Positions 7,551 to 15,689 of a DNA stretch of 64,000 nucleotides are shown piece by piece. Position 1 is the stretch's first letter, and each line of letters starts with the position of its first letter. The notes under the pieces were generated by a model. It saw only the letters and a program-made list of their open reading frames with translations, made no database searches and was not told where the DNA came from. The stretch lies in the IMG/VR virus record IMGVR_UViG_3300032562_000003, positions 124,001-188,000 of that record, one strand, 5' to 3'. A program made the translations under genes and the position numbers.

Positions 7551-8186
7551 ATGTGTATTTATTGCGGCACTACCAAATACCGTAGAATCTACGAACAACA
7601 CAACGGACCTATTCCAAAAGAAGAGAATGATCGATCATATGAAATCCATCACATAGACGGTGATCATTCAAATAATGACCCGATAAACTTGAAGTGTGTA
7701 ACTATTCAAGAACATTATGATATTCATTATTCTCAAGGTGACTACGGTGCTTGTTTTTTACTAGGTAAAAAACAAAAAGTTTCACCTGAAAAACTATCCG
7801 ATTTGAATAGGCTACAGAACTTAACCAGAATACAGAATAATACCCACAACTTGATCAAAAGGGCAGATGGTAGTTCACATGCGTCGGACAGGGTAAAAAA
7901 CGGAACTCATCATTTCTTAGACAAAGAAGCCGCAAGTCTCAGAGGAAAAAAACGAGTAGAAAACGGAACTCATCATTTCTTGAAACAAAACAGGTCACTT
8001 GCTTTTGTAGATAAAGTTAATCAACCTGTATATAAATGGAAACACGTAAAAACTGGTGAAATAGAAATTTTAACAGCAAAAGATTTCATGATCAAACATG
8101 ATTTATCAAAGTATCAAGGGAACATAAGTTGGTTAATAAGTGGTAAACATAAATCGGTTAAAGGTTGGATAGTAATACGAGATTGA
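7551..8186 (+). mobile_element. free-standing HNH homing endonuclease, antisense to the head operon
   Basis: EIHHIDGDHSNNDPINLKCVTIQEHYDIH HNH motif; C-terminal NUMOD1-like GNISWLISGKHKSVKGW. Confidence 0.85.
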
Positions 8187-8478: not shown

Positions 8479-8492
8479 GACACCCTCATCAA

Positions 8493-8517
8493 TATATTTA
8501 TCATTATGATAAATATA
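8493..8517. promoter_or_regulatory. back-to-back late promoters forming an 11-bp inverted repeat
   Basis: TATATTTATCA-tta-TGATAAATATA, with GATAAATA on the minus strand (8495-8502) and the plus strand (8508-8515). Confidence 0.75.
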
Positions 8518-8577
8518 AACGTAGTTCGCGGGTCAGCAAACCCCAACTACTCTAATGCTATCTTAGGAAACATCAGC
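8508..8577 (+). promoter_or_regulatory. late promoter plus conserved two-hairpin leader, copy 2
   Basis: GATAAATA taaac GTAGTT cgc GGGT cagcaa ACCC c AACTAC tcta ATGCT atcttaggaaacatc AGC-ATG. Confidence 0.85.
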
Positions 8578-9418
8578 ATGACTATTTATCTATACAAGAA
8601 AACCCATAACATAACTGGATTAAAATACTTAGGTAAAACCGCACAATCTAATCCATATAAGTATCCAGGATCCGGAAAAATGTAGAGGTCGCATATAAAA
8701 ACACATGGGTATGATGTTACTACTGAAATATTACGAGAGTGTCACTCTAAAGAAGAGGTAGCAGAATGGGGTTATACTACTCTAAACTGTGGAATATAGT
8801 AGACGAGCGGGATAAGAATGGGAAGAAAACGTGGGCTAATCTAAAGTTTGAAGAGGGCGACGGAGGTGCAACTGTTTTTGGTGACAGCCATCATTCTAAA
8901 ACTATTGAATTTAAAAATAGAATTGATCACGCATGGACTCCCGAAAAAAGAAAAAAACAAGGTGATCTGTCTCGATCACGATTTTCGCACATGTCTACTG
9001 AAGACAAAAAACATATAAGAAAAAAAGCAATCGACACTAGAACTAAAAATAACCCAGATTGGAGGAAAGACTTATCTGATAGAATGTTAGGGAAAACAAT
9101 CCTTCAAAATCTAAAGAAGTAATAGAAAAGATAGCAGAAAGTAAATCAAACTGGAATGACTCCTTTCGAGAATATGTAATCAGTAAAAATTCTGGAATTA
9201 ATCATTACAGAAACAACCCTAATTACAAATCAACTCAATTTGGAAAGGGGCACCCTAATTATAACCCCAATGTATACTCATTTAAAAATAAAAATACACT
9301 AGAAGAAGTTAGAATGACAGTGTTTGATTTTATAAAAACATACAACCTACATCAAGGAAATGTAAGTTTATTAATGTCTGGAAAAAGAAAATCTGTACGC
9401 GGGTGGATGTTATCTTAG
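8578..9418 (+). pseudogene. decayed GIY-YIG (Seg-like) homing endonuclease
   Basis: Starts MTIYLYKKTHNITGLKYLGKT, nearly identical to 17975..18682. TAG at 8683-8685 replaces the conserved Trp. Two 1-nt losses in G runs (8768-8771, 9090-9092). The third frame ends ...GNVSLLMSGKRKSVRGWMLS*. Confidence 0.85.
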
Positions 9419-12400
9419 AAGCCGCCGCCCGGAGTTGCTCCAGGTCCGCCCATTGCTGATGGTTCTGCTGCTACATCGCCGCCTGAAACTGGCCCAGCAG
9501 TTTCCGGTGCTTCACCTTCCTGTTCGGAATTCTCAATCTGATCCGCAGTATTCATATCAGCATCAAAGTCTCCGCTGGATACACCTATGTTTCTAAGATC
9601 AGCACCCTGTGGTTCGCTAGTGACTTCTTCTCTGTTTTCTTCTTCCCAGAGCTTTTCGTTCTTCTTGATTTCTTCTTCTGAAAGACCTAAGAATCTTTCA
9701 AGGTTGAAGCGCTTTGACATGTATGGAATAGCATCCATAGCAGAGAACACTGATACTCGTGCATTATCTAACTCACTCTGACGGTAGGCTGCAAAGTTTT
9801 GCGGAGGATTAAAAGTTAGTTGGAAAAGACTAGTATCAATATTGAAGCCTCTCCAACGCAAGAATAACTTAAACTCTTCATCCAGCTTCAAGCAGATATA
9901 ATTCTGAAGTCTTTCACAGTATTGATTGAATCTAAATTCTTGAATCATCGCTGTGCCGACACGACCATCGTTCATGGGTGTAGTATTGTCGTCGGGACCA
10001 GTTGGTAAGTATGAAGACGGAACACGAAGTCCACGGGCAAGACGATTATTGAAGTACTTCAAGTCATCGATTTCACCTAGATTTTGTCCGCCCGGCAGAA
10101 CTTCAACAGATGATCCACGTCCTTCTGCTGTTACAGGGAAGAAATAGTCTTCGTTCATTGAGTTCTTTACAAATATACCAGCGTCGATAGCAAACGTATG
10201 ATAATCATGCCATTGATGACGCCCATCAATAGTTATAGTTCCAGTGTCTCTGTTACTTACCTTTTCAATCTTTACAATTCTATGGTTAAAATTGTCAATT
10301 TCTTTTACAAAATGTTTCCAATTTTTATATCCAAATTTAGAAAGAAGTCTGTCTAACTTACTGTACCCAAACTTATTAAAGTCTATTTTACATTGTGCAT
10401 TTTTATAATCCAATGGTGATGAATTAGCATTCTTAACCAAACTCAATAAGGTGCTATCATTATCACACCACTCCAGTACCTTATTTTTATTTTTATTACC
10501 TTGCTTAACCTGTTCTGCTACTCGTTGTACCATATCAAATGTCAAGATCAGTGGTTGATTTTTAATTTTAACTCTCTTTTCACAATTTGCACGAACTTTT
10601 TCCAAACCAACTGGATTACGATCAAAGTACTCTTTGCGCACTTGTTGCATACTAGATTTATATTTAGCCGCAGTTATAGGATCGTTCTTTCTAGCCCATA
10701 CAGCTTTTTGTTGCGCTGCTCTAATGTTCCAAAGACCGATTAGACGTTCTTCTTCGGTCATATTTTCCCAATTTTCTTTTAGAGTGGCCGAAGTTTTAGA
10801 CGTTATCTGCTTTCTATATTCATCTGACATCGTTTCCCAAAATTCTTTTTTCTGTGCAGCATGATATAAAACATGATCTGTTTTGTTCATGAATACTAGG
10901 TTTTTGGGTTCGTTATTAAATCTATTGTTATCTTTATGATGAATAACTGTTCTAGGTGCCATTGCGTATTCAGTTAGATAATTAAATTCTTGGTGCTTTC
11001 CTAAATTTCTAAAGAAATCCCCGACCATCCGATGAGTCCAAATCCATTTTTTACTCTCATGGTCCCATACCTGCTGGTAATCATTGGTTTTTCCGCCTGA
11101 AATATTTTTATTTTGAGTATTGAACGCAATTAGACTATCATTTTCAGTTAAATGTTGTGCTTCTACAAAGCCTTTATCAAACACAGGTATTTTATGGTCT
11201 GGTGTACAAACTAATGTTTTGCCGTTATCAAAAGTAAGTTTAATTACTTCTGTGTTTTTTCTAGTAATGCCAGCCCAATTAATTACTCCAGGTACTACTC
11301 TACCGGTTACTGGATCGCAGCTATACGCCCAATTTTCTTTTCCAGCTTCAAATTCAGTGATTATTTCTTGTAAAGACAAGGTTCTTCCATCTAAAAGTGG
11401 AATTTTAGTTTCTAAATCCAAACATAAAGGGTTATAAGAGGCGTCCACAATCGACTGTCCACCGTACGGTGAGGGAATTCTACGCTGGTGAATTTCGTTC
11501 TTTACTCGCTCAACAAATGCCATTGCTAAGTGACTTGGCATGTTACCAACATCGATCTTAAACATTCTACGTTCAGGTGCACGCTGCACACGATAGATAA
11601 GAACCGCATCTTCTAGTAGTTCTTTTTGCTTATAGACCTTAAAGATGTTTTCCAGTATAGATTGACCAAAAGGCCAAAATCTATCTAATCCTTCAGTTAA
11701 GGACAAGTGTACAATATGCTTACTGTCTACTGCTGATTCACTCTGACCTAATGTAAAACGACTTCCAGTCGTATTATATGGCATTGCCGGAACAGTGTAC
11801 GGGGTGTTAGTTCCGCCGCCACTACCACCTAAACCAGTTGCTGGGTTCGCAGCAAAGTCAGTATTGGTTTTCTGTGCTACTGATAAGTTTTGTAGATTGA
11901 TATTGATGTCTTTGATGACATACTGTTCCGGCTTCTTGCCCTCAGATTCGTTGACGATAACCTTAATGACCTTAACCATATCAACCCAGTATAGCTTAAA
12001 GTTTTCTGGGTCACGAACAAATACTTGGTCACCATACTTGACAACGTTTCTGAAAATCTTAAACATTCTCACGTCGAATTCATTTAGCTTGCACCACTGT
12101 TGTAGCTGCTTACCTAGCAATTCTACTTCACGTGGCGTAGGTTCTCCTTTGAATTCAAACGCAAACGGTGTCTTGTTATGTTCATTTCGCTGTGTAGAGA
12201 ACTCTGCTATGATGTCCAAACAAGCGTTGATTTCAGCATCAACGTCCATCATTTCGTATTGATTGTATCGTTCGATTCTGTTGGGGTGACCAGTGTAGAC
12301 TTCCGGTAGTCTACTTTGATAGTTTTTGTATCCAAATTCAGTATTGTTCCAACCACCAGTTGGCATACCGTTTTGTCCAGGCGACCCATTCCATGCTCCG

Positions 12401-12474
12401 GCATTACTGCTCGCACCAGAGATAGGACTCGAAACACCACTCTTGTTTAGAAATTTCTTCTTGTATCCAGACAT
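9415..12474 (-). CDS. gp20: portal protein (gp20-like) containing an intein
   Basis: RYNQYEMMDVDAEINACLD, LLEDAVLIYRVQRAPERRMFKIDVGNMP, EDYFFP, VEVLPGGQNLGEIDDLKYF, RGLRVPSSYL. Confidence 0.96.
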   Translation of the reverse strand: MSGYKKKFLNKSGVSSPISGASSNAGAWNGSPGQNGMPTGGWNNTEFGYKNYQSRLPEVYTGHPNRIERYNQYEMMDVDAEINACLDIIAEFSTQRNEHNKTPFAFEFKGEPTPREVELLGKQLQQWCKLNEFDVRMFKIFRNVVKYGDQVFVRDPENFKLYWVDMVKVIKVIVNESEGKKPEQYVIKDININLQNLSVAQKTNTDFAANPATGLGGSGGGTNTPYTVPAMPYNTTGSRFTLGQSESAVDSKHIVHLSLTEGLDRFWPFGQSILENIFKVYKQKELLEDAVLIYRVQRAPERRMFKIDVGNMPSHLAMAFVERVKNEIHQRRIPSPYGGQSIVDASYNPLCLDLETKIPLLDGRTLSLQEIITEFEAGKENWAYSCDPVTGRVVPGVINWAGITRKNTEVIKLTFDNGKTLVCTPDHKIPVFDKGFVEAQHLTENDSLIAFNTQNKNISGGKTNDYQQVWDHESKKWIWTHRMVGDFFRNLGKHQEFNYLTEYAMAPRTVIHHKDNNRFNNEPKNLVFMNKTDHVLYHAAQKKEFWETMSDEYRKQITSKTSATLKENWENMTEEERLIGLWNIRAAQQKAVWARKNDPITAAKYKSSMQQVRKEYFDRNPVGLEKVRANCEKRVKIKNQPLILTFDMVQRVAEQVKQGNKNKNKVLEWCDNDSTLLSLVKNANSSPLDYKNAQCKIDFNKFGYSKLDRLLSKFGYKNWKHFVKEIDNFNHRIVKIEKVSNRDTGTITIDGRHQWHDYHTFAIDAGIFVKNSMNEDYFFPVTAEGRGSSVEVLPGGQNLGEIDDLKYFNNRLARGLRVPSSYLPTGPDDNTTPMNDGRVGTAMIQEFRFNQYCERLQNYICLKLDEEFKLFLRWRGFNIDTSLFQLTFNPPQNFAAYRQSELDNARVSVFSAMDAIPYMSKRFNLERFLGLSEEEIKKNEKLWEEENREEVTSEPQGADLRNIGVSSGDFDADMNTADQIENSEQEGEAPETAGPVSGGDVAAEPSAMGGPGATPGGGF
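10162..11424 (-). mobile_element. intein (421 aa, residues 351-771) with an HNH endonuclease domain
   Basis: Begins CLDLETKIPLLDG and ends HTFAIDAGIFVKN followed by Ser. Contains block B LVCTPDHKIPV and internal HNH VIHHKDNNRFNNEPKNL...H. Removing it restores contiguous YNPL|SMNEDYFFP. Confidence 0.92.
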
Positions 12475-12506: not shown

Positions 12507-15500
12507 CTATGCCATTGAATTACGTAATAACTTAGTCTGTGTACCGTGACTACTTTCAAGGACGGAGATTACTTTATCTAATTTATTTGCCATCATTCCA
12601 AACATTTCCGCTGTAATTTCTCCTGAATTACCAGAAGAATGAGGGTGTGCGGTTTTACCTTTAACTATAGTTTCTATTGCGGCCGCGTCAGTTGCAGGTG
12701 TTTTAGCTAATTTCATAAGCAAAGAATCTGGTCCTAAAGGTGCAACCAGTTCGCCGCCGTGCAATGTAGCCGGATATCCAGACAATGGCCCATCAAACAT
12801 TCCACCGTTTCTAGCTTGTAATTTTCCTTGTCTAAGTAGTGAAATATCCTCTTGCGCCCGACGCCCTACTTGTCCTGCCCACTTACTAGAAGATAATTGT
12901 GCGGCCGCGCCTTCAACATCACCAGCCGAAAGTGCAGCAGTTAAATGTGGCCACTTTTTGTACCAAGACGGGCCCATATTAAATGTCAAGTCTGTTAGCG
13001 CAGCTTGGCCTTTTTCATTTAATTTGTTGAATCCCGGAATATTGCTAGCAGCTTGTTTATGCTTGCCGAAATCCTGCTGGTAAAGTTTCATGACTTCATC
13101 CTTAGAGAACTCACGATTCCATTCAGGTGGTAAAGTACTACCGTCACCGATCAAATGACCCACCCCAATTGTCCATTTACCTAAGGAGTCTTTATATGGT
13201 TTAGTACGCACTCCTTCATGTCCTGCAATTAGATCCATTACCCAATTTCCAAATGACCCAATTGCACCTGCGGCGGCGCCACCGGCTTTTCCTAAGAAAC
13301 TTCCAGCTGCGCCCAACGCGCCGCCTGCTGCATGACCAGCTGCGCCCAACGCGCCTCCTGCTGCATGACCAGCTGCGCCCAACGCGCCTCCTGCTGCATG
13401 ACCAGCTGCGCCCAACGCGCCTCCTACTGCACCCACTGCTCCTGCCCCTAAAGCGGCGCCTGCTGCCATAGCTCCGCCGCCGCCGCCGGATGCTCCACCG
13501 CCTCGGAAGCTACCCATAGCAGTAGCGAACTTCAAGAATGCATCAGTGTTCTTGTCTGCATTAGGACCAAAATCCATCTTAGTGAACTTAAGGAATGCTT
13601 CAGTCGGGCTGTCTTGACCGAATAACTTGCTTAATCCGGAAACTGCTATATCTTTTATTGCTGTTCCCAAGCTTGGTCCGCCTTTATACTTAGACATCGC
13701 TTCCGAAAATGCTATTAATGCATCGGCGTTGGTTTTTACTTTGGCACCGTCGATAGGGAATGATTGGAAATACATTAGTTGCTTAGCAGCAATCTTTAGC
13801 GGATCTTCTTTACCTCCTCCAGTAAAGAAGTTGGCCATTCTACCCATTGCTCCAGCAACTTGTCCAGCGCCTATAGCAACGATGCCAACGCCTAATGCCG
13901 CCATACCTAAACCGGCTTTTTTAAGATTTTCGCCGTTAATGTCATTAAACGCTTTTAAACTCTTTCCCAAGCTTGGAAGCATTACGCTTATTAAGCCGCC
14001 GCCTATGGCCAAACCAGCACCGATACCGGTGATGATCGCAGCAAGAGCAACCCCTAATGCCACGCCGCCCTCCATAACCGCCGGCCCGGCCTTACCTGCT
14101 GCTGCTAGTGCTTCTACTAGACCCATAAGCATTCCGCCGCCGGCGGCTTTACTCATACCACCTACTGCCTCAGCGGCGCCGGCTGCTCCTTTCGGAGCAC
14201 CGCCTCCTAATAGACCCGCAAGTCCACCTGCTTTTCCTAATGCTGCTTTTCCTAAGTTAAATGTAACTAGCCCAAGAGCTCCTGCAAGTGCTACACCGGC
14301 TAAGGTTGCCAGAGTTAAACCATGTTGGAATGGATTCATACTATTAATTAACTCATCCATTCCAACTTTAGCTTTGATTTCTGCATTAGTTAACGCATTT
14401 CTCGCATCTTGTGCTGGATCTTCTGGTCCATTTTCAGCTACACTAGCTGGTTCATATCCAGCTAATTGGTTTGCTGTAGTGAGTGTTCCTGTATTAATAT
14501 TAGCCGCAGAAGCTAATCCTGAATTAACAGACAATGCTGTACTATTTTTAGTTGCAAAGTCTAATGTTTTATCAACCAAATCTTTTTGGAAGTCACCGGC
14601 CTCTTTAGTACCAAACGTTCCTGCGTTGACGGCTGACGCCGTTTTTGCATAATCCTGACCAGTACCTTGAAGTGCTAGAGCTTTTTGGAAAGGCCCGGAA
14701 ACAAAACCTTGTGTTATCTGTTGAGCCATGGCGGCGGCGGAGTCGGCGCCGCCTGTTCTTTGTGCAACTTGAACTGCGTTTTGCGCACTATCTATTTGCT
14801 TTTTTATAGCGTCCTTTTCAGCTTGAGTCTTTGCTGCGTCCATTTCTTTGTGTTTTTTAGCAAGAAATAGCTGGAATTGTATATTAGCCATCGACGCGGC
14901 TTGAGTTTTCTTCTCTTGTTCTACAGATTCTCCGGTAGCTGCGGACATCTCATTTAAATTTTTGATGTATGCAAGGGATGCACCTTGCAGACCACCGGTA
15001 GTCTTACTCAAATCTCGCAACGAAACACCACCTTCAGACATTAAGGTGTTGTAGTCAGCCTGAGCCTGCATTAGTTCGTCTACGCCATATCCCAATCTTT
15101 GAAATTGATTTCTAACCTTTTCGGTTACATGAACCTGTTCTGCAAACTTCTTAGTAGAATCGGCGGCTCCATTACCTAATGCATTGAAGGAATTACCCAT
15201 GCTTTGCATAGGTTTGAGCATTTTTTGAAAATCACCTGAGGCTAAACCAGCATTATTAGCCATCTTTTGAAGTTCGTTAGTGGTGAAAGTGTTAACAGCA
15301 CCTAACCTACTGATACCATCAGAAAATTTTAGTAAATTATCAGTTTGGGCGGTCGCTGCACTCACTACTTTAGTAAATGCAGCAGCTACTAAACCTGCAG
15401 CAACCCCAACGGGCCCCAAAGCTTTTCCTACTTGTATTGCGGCGGTTCCCATGCTATCTAAAGCTGATGTATATTTGTTTAACTCACCTGTACCGTTAAG

Positions 15501-15689
15501 TAATGCTTTAGCGAAGCTACCGGCAGCATCGTCTAACGATCTGAATGCTTTGTTGACGCTACCTACGCGAGTTGAAGCGTTATCAGAAGATTCGCTGAGA
15601 TTTTTTATTGCAGGAGAGGCGTCCCGGCTAATAATATCTGATAACTCTTTAAGCTGTGCGCTTAGCTCTGCTGCGATTTCTGGATCCAT
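12507..15689 (-). CDS. tape-measure-like protein with a C-terminal GH24 (T4-type) lysozyme domain
   Basis: Long Ala/Gly-rich helical protein. HEGVRTKPYKDSLGKWTIG shows the lysozyme E-x8-D-x5-T triad. Confidence 0.8.
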   Translation of the reverse strand: MDPEIAAELSAQLKELSDIISRDASPAIKNLSESSDNASTRVGSVNKAFRSLDDAAGSFAKALLNGTGELNKYTSALDSMGTAAIQVGKALGPVGVAAGLVAAAFTKVVSAATAQTDNLLKFSDGISRLGAVNTFTTNELQKMANNAGLASGDFQKMLKPMQSMGNSFNALGNGAADSTKKFAEQVHVTEKVRNQFQRLGYGVDELMQAQADYNTLMSEGGVSLRDLSKTTGGLQGASLAYIKNLNEMSAATGESVEQEKKTQAASMANIQFQLFLAKKHKEMDAAKTQAEKDAIKKQIDSAQNAVQVAQRTGGADSAAAMAQQITQGFVSGPFQKALALQGTGQDYAKTASAVNAGTFGTKEAGDFQKDLVDKTLDFATKNSTALSVNSGLASAANINTGTLTTANQLAGYEPASVAENGPEDPAQDARNALTNAEIKAKVGMDELINSMNPFQHGLTLATLAGVALAGALGLVTFNLGKAALGKAGGLAGLLGGGAPKGAAGAAEAVGGMSKAAGGGMLMGLVEALAAAGKAGPAVMEGGVALGVALAAIITGIGAGLAIGGGLISVMLPSLGKSLKAFNDINGENLKKAGLGMAALGVGIVAIGAGQVAGAMGRMANFFTGGGKEDPLKIAAKQLMYFQSFPIDGAKVKTNADALIAFSEAMSKYKGGPSLGTAIKDIAVSGLSKLFGQDSPTEAFLKFTKMDFGPNADKNTDAFLKFATAMGSFRGGGASGGGGGAMAAGAALGAGAVGAVGGALGAAGHAAGGALGAAGHAAGGALGAAGHAAGGALGAAGSFLGKAGGAAAGAIGSFGNWVMDLIAGHEGVRTKPYKDSLGKWTIGVGHLIGDGSTLPPEWNREFSKDEVMKLYQQDFGKHKQAASNIPGFNKLNEKGQAALTDLTFNMGPSWYKKWPHLTAALSAGDVEGAAAQLSSSKWAGQVGRRAQEDISLLRQGKLQARNGGMFDGPLSGYPATLHGGELVAPLGPDSLLMKLAKTPATDAAAIETIVKGKTAHPHSSGNSGEITAEMFGMMANKLDKVISVLESSHGTQTKLLRNSMA
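13303..13431. repeat. 33-bp tandem repeat (about 3.9 units) encoding AAGGALGAAGH
   Basis: Units start at 13303, 13336, 13369 and 13402 and are nearly identical at DNA level. Confidence 0.9.

What the first reader, a model, noticed from the sequence alone, without database searches (positions are those of the whole stretch)
10162..11424. Intein in the portal protein carrying an HNH rather than a LAGLIDADG nuclease
SEEN: a 421-aa insertion from Cys351 to Asn771 with +1 Ser and penultimate Lys instead of His, at the conserved YNPL|SMNEDY site. It contains an HNH motif and a long basic helical region. Splicing would give a 598-aa portal. KNOWN: most inteins sit in nucleotide-handling enzymes and most intein nucleases are LAGLIDADG. 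INFERENCE: portal ring formation, and therefore head initiation, depends on splicing, which could gate assembly conditionally.
Basis: partly seen in the sequence, partly recalled or inferred. Interest (0 to 1): 0.6.

Follow-up and report, generated by a model that had tools for sequence, protein, structure and literature searches.

The report
HNH intein in a phage portal
The portal gene of this freshwater jumbo phage is interrupted in frame by a real, apparently active self-splicing intein that carries an HNH homing nuclease; it belongs to a large, apparently undescribed portal-specific intein family, but it is a selfish mobile element of a known kind and nothing shows that it regulates assembly.

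Summary
ORF 9415..12474 (-) encodes a 1019-aa T4 gp20-type portal. It is interrupted between YNPL and SMNEDY by a 421-aa insert (10162..11424) with Cys1, Lys-Asn at its end and Ser at +1. Intein-less portals show a gap with exactly these borders.

The insert is a class-1 intein. It has the block B TxxH motif, the block F Asp and His, and a HINT fold (Z 22 to the NrdJ-1 intein). It carries an I-HmuI-like HNH domain followed by basic helices and an HTH-like module.

In 184 relatives the splicing residues and the HNH motif are nearly invariant. The penultimate Lys is a family trait (162/184), not decay.

All of the best 150 representative clusters checked are T4-type portals. Intein-bearing and intein-less alleles are interleaved on the extein tree (at least 10 gains or losses). 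An intein-less relative co-occurs in the same lake samples. The intein DNA is AT-richer than the exteins.

The site maps to the clip domain of T4 gp20 (328|329), so splicing is very probably needed for a working portal. Conditional gating has no support.

HNH inteins and portal inteins are both already known. I file this as a new member of a known kind, of moderate interest.

The parts
9415..12474 (-). Portal precursor gene, 1019 codons plus stop; a T4 gp20-type portal interrupted by one intein
   Evidence: ORF list and translation. Pfam Portal_T4 at 1.5e-94, split into two stretches; PHROG 213 portal at 3e-97.
11425..12474 (-). N-extein, portal residues 1-350, ending in YNPL
   Evidence: Matches intein-less portals up to residue 350 exactly. 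It is 91-96% identical to many 593-604-aa intein-less alleles.
10162..11424 (-). Intein, 421 aa (Cys351-Asn771), 49.2 kDa, pI 9.2, GC 33.7% against 42-45% in the exteins
11119..11424 (-). N-terminal splicing region (intein residues 1-102): block A with Cys1, block B with T74-P-D-H77
   Evidence: TIGR01445 at 33.6 bits. C1, T74 and H77 are invariant in 184 relatives. The region is part of the HINT fold, Z 22.0 to 8ubs_A.
10837..11118 (-). HNH nuclease domain (intein residues 103-196); catalytic motif H162 H163 ... N171 ... N175 ... D183 H184 ... H188 at 10861..10941
   Evidence: Pfam HNH_3 at 21.7 bits (below the 24.8 cut-off); PHROG 7545 at 1e-8. The motif is invariant or nearly so in 184 relatives. 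The best fold match is I-HmuI 1u3e_M: Foldseek prob 0.80, VIA Z 6.2, rmsd 3.0 over 74 residues, which is weak.
10555..10836 (-). Basic helical region (intein residues 197-290), four long helices, net charge +7; probable DNA-binding arm
   Evidence: Model helices 201-282; charge. Weak likeness to the DNA-bound STPR helices, Z 5.8-6.4. Poorly conserved in the family.
10291..10554 (-). Small helical module (intein residues 291-378) resembling helix-turn-helix DNA-binding domains
   Evidence: VIA Z 4-5 to AraC- and TetR-type HTH domains, which is weak. pLDDT is mostly 85-97.
10162..10290 (-). C-terminal splicing region (intein residues 379-421): block F with D400 and H409, block G ending K420-N421
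   Evidence: In 184 relatives: D400 182, H409 184, K420 162, N421 184. It completes the HINT fold.
9418..10161 (-). C-extein, portal residues 772-1019, starting with Ser772 (+1 nucleophile)
   Evidence: Ser+1 is found in 184/184 relatives. Ser772 aligns with T4 gp20 S329.

Best explanation
The insert is a functional class-1 intein carrying an HNH homing endonuclease, lodged in the clip domain of a T4 gp20-type portal of a freshwater jumbo phage.

The gene is translated as a 1019-aa precursor. The HINT domain then splices itself out in four steps:
- Cys351 attacks the Leu350 carbonyl, helped by Thr424 and His427 of block B.
- Ser772 takes over the N-extein, helped by Asp750 of block F.
- Asn771 cyclises and releases the intein. 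His759 and, in this family, Lys770 stand where the usual penultimate His would act.
- An O-to-N shift leaves a normal Leu350-Ser772 bond and a 598-aa portal.

The released 49-kDa intein is an I-HmuI-like HNH nuclease with a basic helical arm and an HTH-like module. In a cell co-infected by an intein-less relative, it would cut or nick that relative's portal gene at or near the YNPL|S codons. Recombinational repair from the intein-bearing copy would then copy the intein in (homing).

Shown by computation: borders, residues, fold, insertion site, family and distribution. Inferred: that splicing and cleavage actually occur.
For: - Exact borders against intein-less portals.
- Intein models above their cut-offs.
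- A profile search hits the NrdJ-1 intein at E 5e-12.
- The AF2 model has pLDDT 91, and its HINT domain matches NrdJ-1 at Z 22.0, rmsd 1.5 A over 142 residues.
- In 184 relatives down to about 27% identity, C1, T74, H77, H409, N421 and Ser+1 are invariant and D400 is present in 182. The HNH residues H162, H163 and N175 are invariant, and H184, H188 and N171 are present in 182-183.
- On an N-extein tree of 148 portals (28 with the intein, 120 without) the label needs at least 10 changes, at least 5 of them forced by well-supported branches. There are with/without sister pairs at branch lengths under 0.03.
- In close phages the extein is more conserved than the intein (90-94% against 75-80%). 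In distant ones the intein is the more conserved (69-72% against 58-62%).
- The intein's GC is 33.7% and its GC3 25.7%, against 42-45% and 37-40% in the exteins.
- In three lake-water runs a related allele reads straight across an intein-less junction (DATYNPL-ST) at depth 48-54 in two of them and 5 in the third, beside the intein-bearing phage at 72-97.
Against: - No experiment: splicing, cleavage and homing are all inferred.
- Pfam HNH_3 is just below its cut-off, and the fold match to I-HmuI is weak (Z 6.2; Foldseek E 0.25).
- The penultimate His is replaced by Lys. Splicing without that His is documented for other inteins (references cited in PMC4031507), but it has not been tested for Lys here.
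- The nearest intein-less allele I could read as DNA is only about 80% identical in nucleotides, so no recent homing event or co-conversion tract was seen.
- The tree used FastTree on a biased sample (the best hits of two searches).
Confidence: 0.85

Rival explanations
1. The intein still splices because the portal is essential, but it is no longer mobile. On this reading the HNH domain is inactive or has another role, and the patchy distribution reflects repeated precise losses from an old insertion.
For: The middle third of the intein (residues 197-360) is poorly conserved. Extein and intein identities are positively correlated (r 0.71), which fits much vertical descent. No near-identical pair of intein-bearing and intein-less alleles was found at the DNA level.
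Against: The HNH catalytic motif is invariant or nearly so in 184 members across very divergent portals, which implies selection on the nuclease. Related inteins sit at several different sites in the same gene, which needs movement. In distant phages the intein is more conserved than the extein. The AT-rich composition differs from that of the host gene.
Confidence: 0.08
2. One reading: the intein is kept because splicing responds to a condition (redox, temperature, metal) and so times or gates portal dodecamer formation and head initiation.
For: The site lies in the clip domain, so an unspliced precursor is unlikely to work. The nucleophile is a Cys, and two further Cys (C36, C73) are fairly well conserved, in 157-158 of 184 members. 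The unusual Lys at the penultimate place could change the rate of Asn cyclisation. Conditional splicing exists in other inteins (established knowledge, not tested here).
Against: Very many phages with 91-96% identical exteins do without the intein, and intein-less alleles are interleaved with intein-bearing ones. No regulatory need is therefore visible. A conserved homing nuclease is not required for a regulatory switch. No sensor feature was found. I could not read model coordinates, so the distances between the cysteines were not measured.
Confidence: 0.05
3. The insert is not removed. It stays in the mature portal as a nuclease module, for example one that helps DNA packaging in the way stand-alone HNH proteins next to the terminase and portal genes of some phages do.
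For: HNH proteins that assist terminases are known in other phages (from my own knowledge; not tested here). The host protein sits at the packaging vertex.
Against: The insert has a complete HINT splicing domain whose catalytic residues are all invariant. It sits in the tightly packed clip of the dodecamer. It is absent from most close relatives.
Confidence: 0.02

Closest known systems
HNH-endonuclease inteins (first described by Dalgaard et al. 1997; in-frame HNH inteins of actinobacteriophages, bioRxiv 10.1101/2025.01.02.630785)
   Same: A HINT splicing domain split by an in-frame HNH nuclease in place of LAGLIDADG. Both are found in phages. The preprint calls this architecture rare and non-canonical.
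   Different: In the actinobacteriophage survey, the non-canonical nucleases, in-frame HNH among them, sat in DNA polymerase, minor capsid protein, TerL and thymidylate synthase, and the portal is not among those hosts. Here the host is a T4 gp20-type portal, the nuclease is followed by a long basic helical arm and an HTH-like module, and the penultimate residue is Lys.
Portal-protein inteins of cluster C1 mycobacteriophages and other actinobacteriophages (Kelley et al. 2016, PMC5050341; 2025 preprint)
   Same: An intein in a phage portal protein, a DNA-contacting structural protein.
   Different: Those portals are filed under another portal entry (InterPro IPR009279), not Pfam Portal_T4, and no non-canonical nuclease was reported in portals there. 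No sequence relationship to the present intein was tested.
NrdJ-1 and gp41-1 cyanophage-like split inteins (PDB 8ubs, 6qaz, 6riz)
   Same: The closest solved splicing domains: profile E 5e-12; Z 22.0, rmsd 1.5 A over 142 residues, 27% identity for NrdJ-1; Z 17.9 for gp41-1. From my own knowledge, both also use Cys1 and Ser+1.
   Different: They are split mini-inteins without a nuclease and sit in other host proteins. The present intein is contiguous and carries a nuclease insert of about 280 aa.
I-HmuI (PDB 1u3e), the HNH homing endonuclease of Bacillus phage SPO1
   Same: The best fold match for the nuclease domain (23% identity over 74 residues). The architecture is similar: an HNH core followed by helices and a C-terminal helix-turn-helix DNA-binding part (the I-HmuI architecture is from my own knowledge).
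   Different: I-HmuI is a free-standing, intron-encoded enzyme. The match here is weak (Z 6.2; Foldseek E 0.25), so membership of that subfamily is not established.

Membership tests
Class 1 intein | N-terminal nucleophile Cys or Ser at intein position 1 | tested here: met
   Cys351, invariant in 184/184 relatives.
Class 1 intein | Block B Thr-x-x-His | tested here: met
   T74-P-D-H77; T74 and H77 are 184/184. TIGR01445 is above its cut-off.
Class 1 intein | Block F assisting residues (F:4 Asp, F:13 His) | tested here: met
   D400 in 182/184 and H409 in 184/184. The residue roles are as described in PMC4031507.
Class 1 intein | Block G: penultimate His, C-terminal Asn, and Ser/Thr/Cys at +1 | tested here: inconclusive
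   Asn421 and Ser+1 are 184/184, but the penultimate residue is Lys (162/184) rather than His. The penultimate His is an assisting residue, not an obligatory one. Inteins that splice without it are documented in references cited in PMC4031507.
Class 1 intein | HINT fold | tested here: met
   The model has pLDDT 91. Matches are Z 22.0 to the NrdJ-1 intein, 19.4 to the Mtu RecA intein and 17.2 to PI-PfuI, and all of the first 32 structural hits are intein, Hint or related autoprocessing domains.
Class 1 intein | In-frame insertion at a conserved site of a host protein that also exists without it | tested here: met
   The gap is exact in alignment A1. There are very many 593-604-aa intein-less alleles.
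Class 1 intein | Protein splicing shown experimentally | not testable with these tools
   It needs expression of the precursor or virion proteomics.
HNH (beta-beta-alpha-metal) homing endonuclease, HNH_3 / I-HmuI-like | Match to the family model | tested here: inconclusive
   Pfam HNH_3 scores 21.7 bits against a cut-off of 24.8. PHROG HNH families give E 1e-8 to 1e-5. Several relatives do carry a precomputed PF13392 hit.
HNH (beta-beta-alpha-metal) homing endonuclease, HNH_3 / I-HmuI-like | Conserved catalytic His and Asn/His metal-site residues | tested here: met
   H162, H163 and N175 are 184/184; N171 is 182, H184 is 183 and H188 is 182.
HNH (beta-beta-alpha-metal) homing endonuclease, HNH_3 / I-HmuI-like | Beta-beta-alpha fold resembling solved HNH nucleases | tested here: inconclusive
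   I-HmuI is the top Foldseek hit but is weak (E 0.25, prob 0.80). VIA gives Z 6.2, rmsd 3.0 over 74 residues, and the GVE2 HNH gives Z 4.4.
HNH (beta-beta-alpha-metal) homing endonuclease, HNH_3 / I-HmuI-like | Site-specific cleavage of the intein-less allele, and homing | not testable with these tools
   Only indirect support: the patchy distribution and the co-occurring intein-less allele.
T4 gp20-type portal protein (host gene) | Match to Portal_T4 over both exteins, and synteny with the head module | tested here: met
   PF07230 at 1.5e-94. The exteins match T4 gp20 chains. In the relative L008 the neighbours include the prohead protease S77 and the gp23 capsid protein, and the window has ORFs of matching sizes and order.

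The most novel reading that the evidence does not exclude
The most novel reading not excluded is that splicing of this Lys-Asn intein responds to a condition. The cue could be redox acting through Cys1 and the conserved Cys36 and Cys73, or a slow Asn cyclisation without the penultimate His. The intein would then time the supply of assembly-competent portal and so the start of head assembly, and would be kept partly for that reason. A more modest and more likely novelty is that the portal clip is a hot spot for a portal-specialised HNH intein lineage that has hopped between at least three or four sites within about 95 residues of one gene.
Probability: 0.06. Interest if true: 0.7.

Novelty: new member of a known kind. 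Interest (0 to 1): 0.38.

Why it matters
For the annotation of this genome it settles that the 1019-aa 'portal' is a precursor of a 598-aa portal and a 49-kDa nuclease.

More broadly it shows a very large intein family that is apparently undescribed in the literature I could search. The family seems restricted to T4-type portals of uncultured, mostly jumbo phages. There were 3562 representative clusters at E <= 0.001, and every one of the best 150 that I checked is a portal. Three traits stand out:
- Lys is used consistently in place of the penultimate His.
- The nuclease is HNH, not LAGLIDADG.
- There are several insertion sites in the clip and channel-loop region, with up to four or more inteins in one portal.

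That makes it a good natural system for studying three things: how inteins choose sites in a DNA-contacting structural protein, how they move between sites in one gene, and how Asn cyclisation works with Lys at G:6. The splicing domain is close to the fast NrdJ-1 and gp41-1 inteins used in protein engineering, so the family could also be a source of new tools.

It does not by itself show a new biological principle.

Tried and rejected
- **Phage records, DNA:** megablast of the portal gene against 50,697 phage records found nothing.
- **Phage records, protein:** tblastn of the intein found only 8 weak hits. These were HNH inteins in other host genes, plus one unannotated huge phage.
- **Origin from the neighbouring HNH gene:** the free-standing HNH gene at 7551..8186 shares only the 31-residue motif with the intein (39% identity), so I rejected the idea that the intein nuclease derives from it.
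- **Rfam:** a scan of the whole window at gathering thresholds found nothing. There is no intron-like RNA near the portal.
- **Nuclease fold:** Foldseek on the nuclease domain alone gave no hit at E <= 0.001. The I-HmuI likeness therefore stays weak.
- **Co-conversion tract:** the nearest intein-less allele readable as DNA (L008) is only about 80% identical in nucleotides, with synonymous sites largely saturated. It is not informative.
- **Reads:** the runs are held only as contigs, so they could not show rare intein-less variants of the same strain or any expression. No RNA run holds the stretch.
- **BIL or Hedgehog-type Hint domain instead of an intein:** rejected, because of the terminal Asn, the +1 Ser, the exact in-frame insertion and the intein-less alleles.
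- **Group I intron with an in-frame ORF:** rejected, because the frame is continuous through HINT halves on both sides and Rfam finds nothing.
Full report
**1. The observation**

The ORF at 9415..12474 on the minus strand encodes 1019 residues. Window 10162..11424 (-) translates to 421 residues that begin with Cys and end with Lys-Asn. The next residue is Ser, and the junction context is YNPL|C...KN|SMNEDY.

Pfam finds Portal_T4 (1.5e-94) split into two stretches on either side of the insert. Within the insert it finds Intein_splicing at 36.6 bits (cut-off 35.8). NCBIfam finds the intein N-terminal splicing region TIGR01445 at 33.6 bits (cut-off 24.5). The HNH signal is weaker. Pfam HNH_3 scores 21.7 bits, under its 24.8 cut-off, but PHROG HNH families reach E 1e-8.

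I aligned the protein with the annotated intein-less portals of Pseudomonas phage PA5oct, Sinorhizobium phage Phosso and Cronobacter phage GAP32. The window's protein has a single 421-residue insertion, whose borders fall exactly between the invariant YNPL and S..EDY.

**2. Where the window comes from**

The window is bases 124001-188000 of a 258,859-base IMG/VR virus record estimated to be 73% complete. The exact portal protein occurs on 17 contigs, the longest 314 kb. The DNA is held by freshwater and lake-water metagenomes from 17 studies. The nearest cultured portals, at about 50% identity, belong to jumbo phages such as PA5oct, the Rak2/GAP32 group and Phosso. This is therefore an uncultured freshwater jumbo phage.

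The portal lies in a head module. Upstream is a 1060-aa lysozyme-bearing protein. Downstream are ORFs whose sizes and order match the small gene, the prohead protease, the probable scaffold and the gp23-like capsid gene of a related contig.

**3. What the insert is**

A profile of 124 family members hits the NrdJ-1 intein among solved structures at E 5e-12. An AlphaFold2 model built on that alignment has mean pLDDT 91.

Its two ends, residues 1-102 and 379-421, come together as a HINT domain. That domain superposes on the NrdJ-1 split intein with Z 22.0 and rmsd 1.5 A over 142 residues. It also superposes on the Mtu RecA, Npu DnaB, gp41-1 and PI-PfuI inteins at Z 17-19.

The middle was folded alone (pLDDT 92.9). 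It has three parts:
- a small beta-beta-alpha domain, whose best match is the HNH homing endonuclease I-HmuI, though weakly (Foldseek E 0.25, prob 0.80; VIA Z 6.2, rmsd 3.0 over 74 residues, 23% identity);
- four long helices with net charge +7 that faintly resemble the DNA-bound STPR helices (Z 6.4);
- a three-helix module that resembles the HTH domains of AraC and TetR regulators (Z 4-5).

No LAGLIDADG family was listed by Pfam at E <= 1. The architecture is thus: HINT N-half, HNH, basic helical arm, HTH-like module, HINT C-half.

**4. Is it likely to be active?**

I collected 184 full-length relatives of the intein, with identity down to about 27%, and aligned them.

| Role | Residue (intein numbering) | Present in 184 relatives |
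|---|---|---|
| Block A nucleophile | Cys1 | 184 |
| Block B | Thr74 | 184 |
| Block B | His77 | 184 |
| Block F | Asp400 | 182 |
| Block F | His409 | 184 |
| Block G, penultimate | Lys420 | 162 |
| Block G, terminal | Asn421 | 184 |
| +1 nucleophile | Ser | 184 |
| HNH | His162, His163, Asn175 | 184 each |
| HNH | Asn171 | 182 |
| HNH | His184 | 183 |
| HNH | His188 | 182 |

Splicing without the penultimate His is documented for other inteins (references cited in PMC4031507).
- The helical arm and the HTH-like part (residues 197-360) are poorly conserved.
- Purifying selection on both catalytic centres argues that the element splices and that its nuclease works.

**5. Is it mobile?**

Four lines of evidence point the same way.

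(a) *Distribution.* A search with the N-extein alone returned at least 120 portals of 593-604 aa without any intein that are 91-96% identical to the window's N-extein. A search with the intein returned at least 120 portals that carry it. I built a tree of the N-extein region for 148 portals at least 75% identical to the window's: 28 with the intein and 120 without. The label needs at least 10 gains or losses, at least 5 of them forced by well-supported branches. There are with/without sister pairs such as P0010/P0336 and P0027/P0296. The caveats are that the tree is a FastTree tree and that the sample is biased towards the best hits of two searches.

(b) *Relative divergence.* In close phages the extein is more conserved than the intein (90-94% against 75-80%). 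In distant ones the order reverses (58-62% against 69-72%). This fits occasional transfer between lineages on top of vertical descent (r 0.71).

(c) *Composition.* The intein has GC 33.7% and GC3 25.7%. The exteins have GC 42-45% and GC3 37-40%.

(d) *Co-occurrence.* Logan contigs of four runs were laid on the gene. The intein-bearing form is present without differences. In three lake runs a second, roughly 90% similar contig matches the start of the C-extein. It then continues with letters whose reverse complement reads DATYNPL-ST, an intein-less junction. Its depth is 48-54 in two runs and 5 in the third, beside 72-97 for the intein-bearing phage. Hosts for homing are therefore present in the same waters. 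Co-infection itself is not shown.

**6. The family**

An exhaustive HMMER search of 1.84 billion representatives gave 3562 proteins at E <= 0.001 and 456 at E <= 1e-30. All but three of the best 150 match the window's portal exteins directly. Those three, and two very long hits that I also checked, are T4-type portals by Pfam. So every one of the best 150 is a portal, and the lineage appears to be specific to this host gene.

I mapped the insertions against a natural intein-less portal (P0273). The same kind of intein (C...KN|S) is seen at these sites:

| Site in the portal | Cases | Ends of the insert |
|---|---|---|
| YNPL\|S | 161 | C...KN\|S |
| LPGG\| region, about 25 residues downstream | about 58 | C...KN\|S |
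| NLG\|EIDD | 11 | C...KN\|S |
| FFPVT\|AEG | 12 | C...HN\|S (a different intein) |

- Sixty of 259 portals carry two or more insertions, and some carry up to four.
- One protein of 2818 aa shows six Intein_splicing stretches.
- An unannotated 484-kb 'uncultured phage' record (LR756508.1) encodes a 1386-aa T4-type portal with three intein stretches, one of them with an HNH.

**7. Where the site lies in the portal**

The C-extein's first residue aligns with S329 of T4 gp20. The site is therefore gp20 328|329. According to the 3.6 A structure paper (PMC4493910):
- the clip domain spans residues 279-358;
- the contact between adjacent subunits is in part stabilised by the clip, which contains a three-stranded element;
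- the clip is exposed outside the capsid and is where the terminase gp17 and the neck attach;
- it carries the DNA-facing inner clip loop (R338, K342).

[quoted passage not shown] That paper describes the loop as exceptionally conserved between T4 and SPP1.

Twelve 49-kDa inserts at this place can hardly be compatible with a working dodecamer. It also fits the general rule that phage inteins sit in conserved sites of proteins that touch nucleic acid (PMC5050341).

**8. Conditional gating**

I found nothing that supports it. Many close relatives lack the intein, no sensor feature is visible, and the nuclease is conserved, which a switch would not need. I could not measure Cys-Cys distances in the model. 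The idea stays possible but unlikely (about 5%).

**9. Comparison with what is known**

- Inteins with in-frame HNH nucleases have been known since Dalgaard et al. 1997. They are called rare and non-canonical in a 2025 survey of actinobacteriophages, where the non-canonical nucleases, in-frame HNH among them, sit in DNA polymerase, minor capsid protein, TerL and thymidylate synthase.
- Portal inteins are known in cluster C1 mycobacteriophages and other actinobacteriophages. Those portals are filed under a different portal entry (InterPro IPR009279).
- In Rak2-like jumbo phages a LAGLIDADG intein was noted in TerL, and none in phage CBB.
- The paper on Jug gut jumbo phages mentions fragmented portal genes and 26 Intein_splicing proteins without further detail.
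- Six full-text searches found no description of an intein in a T4 gp20-type portal, of a portal-specific HNH intein family, or of a Lys-Asn intein family. The library lacks most subscription journals, so absence is not proof.

I file the feature as a new member of a known kind. The family-level picture (portal specificity, Lys at G:6, several sites in the clip) is the part worth a specialist's attention.

**10. Procedure notes**

- The spliced (joined) portal was not used as a query for any search or fold. The exteins were searched separately by reference.
- In one local script the two extein DNA stretches were laid end to end, only to pair codons with the natural intein-less allele L008. Nothing from it was saved or sent on. 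The later site map used a natural intein-less portal instead.
- Read laying was given 3060 letters.
- No alternative genetic code was used.

Noticed in passing
window 7551..8186 (+): A free-standing HNH_3 homing-endonuclease gene (Pfam 5.5e-13; PHROG 12324 'intron-like DNA endonuclease' 8e-29). It lies on the opposite strand inside the head-gene module, between the 77-aa gene and the next structural gene. The related intein-less contig L008 has only about 120 nt at that place. The gene shares only the HNH motif with the intein nuclease.
   Followed up: partly
window 8479..9414, with ORF 8766..9122 (+): About 930 nt separate the portal stop from the next gene, against 16 nt in the relative L008. 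The stretch holds a 118-aa basic ORF on the opposite strand that has no PHROG hit and only a Pfam match I take for chance (IBN_N, 21.4 bits against a cut-off of 21). There is no Rfam hit. It may be a remnant of another mobile insertion.
   Followed up: partly
own genome outside the window: G000:C1:231672-234236 (locus L006 727..3289, +): A UvsW/ResIII-like helicase ORF ends in an N-terminal intein half (Hint/Intein_splicing). It is followed by a separate 313-aa ORF with no family hit, then by another ORF. A weak hit to the C-terminal part of the intein model lies further on, in a stretch with stops. This looks like a fractured gene with a split intein and an intervening gene, or like a decayed intein.
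   Followed up: partly
related proteins P0184 (2818 aa), P0158 (2296 aa), P0007 and P0022 (1784 aa); locus L009 1030..5190: T4-type portals of other uncultured phages carry several inteins each: up to four large insertions by alignment, and six Intein_splicing stretches in P0184. Almost all lie within the clip and channel-loop region. Some mix HNH, LAGLIDADG and mini-inteins.
   Followed up: partly
window 12507..15689 (-): The gene just upstream of the portal encodes a 1060-aa protein with long Gly/Ala-rich, membrane-like stretches, a tandem 'GHAAGGALGAA' repeat and a C-terminal phage lysozyme domain (PF00959, 1e-16). It resembles internal virion or ejection proteins with a lysozyme motif. GC rises locally to 58-62%.
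   Followed up: no
window 11606..11940: In three of the four runs the Logan contigs break into short pieces here, and summed depth roughly doubles in two bins (11557-11658 and 11863-11964). This suggests a stretch of the N-extein shared with co-occurring related phages, which breaks the assembly graph.
   Followed up: no
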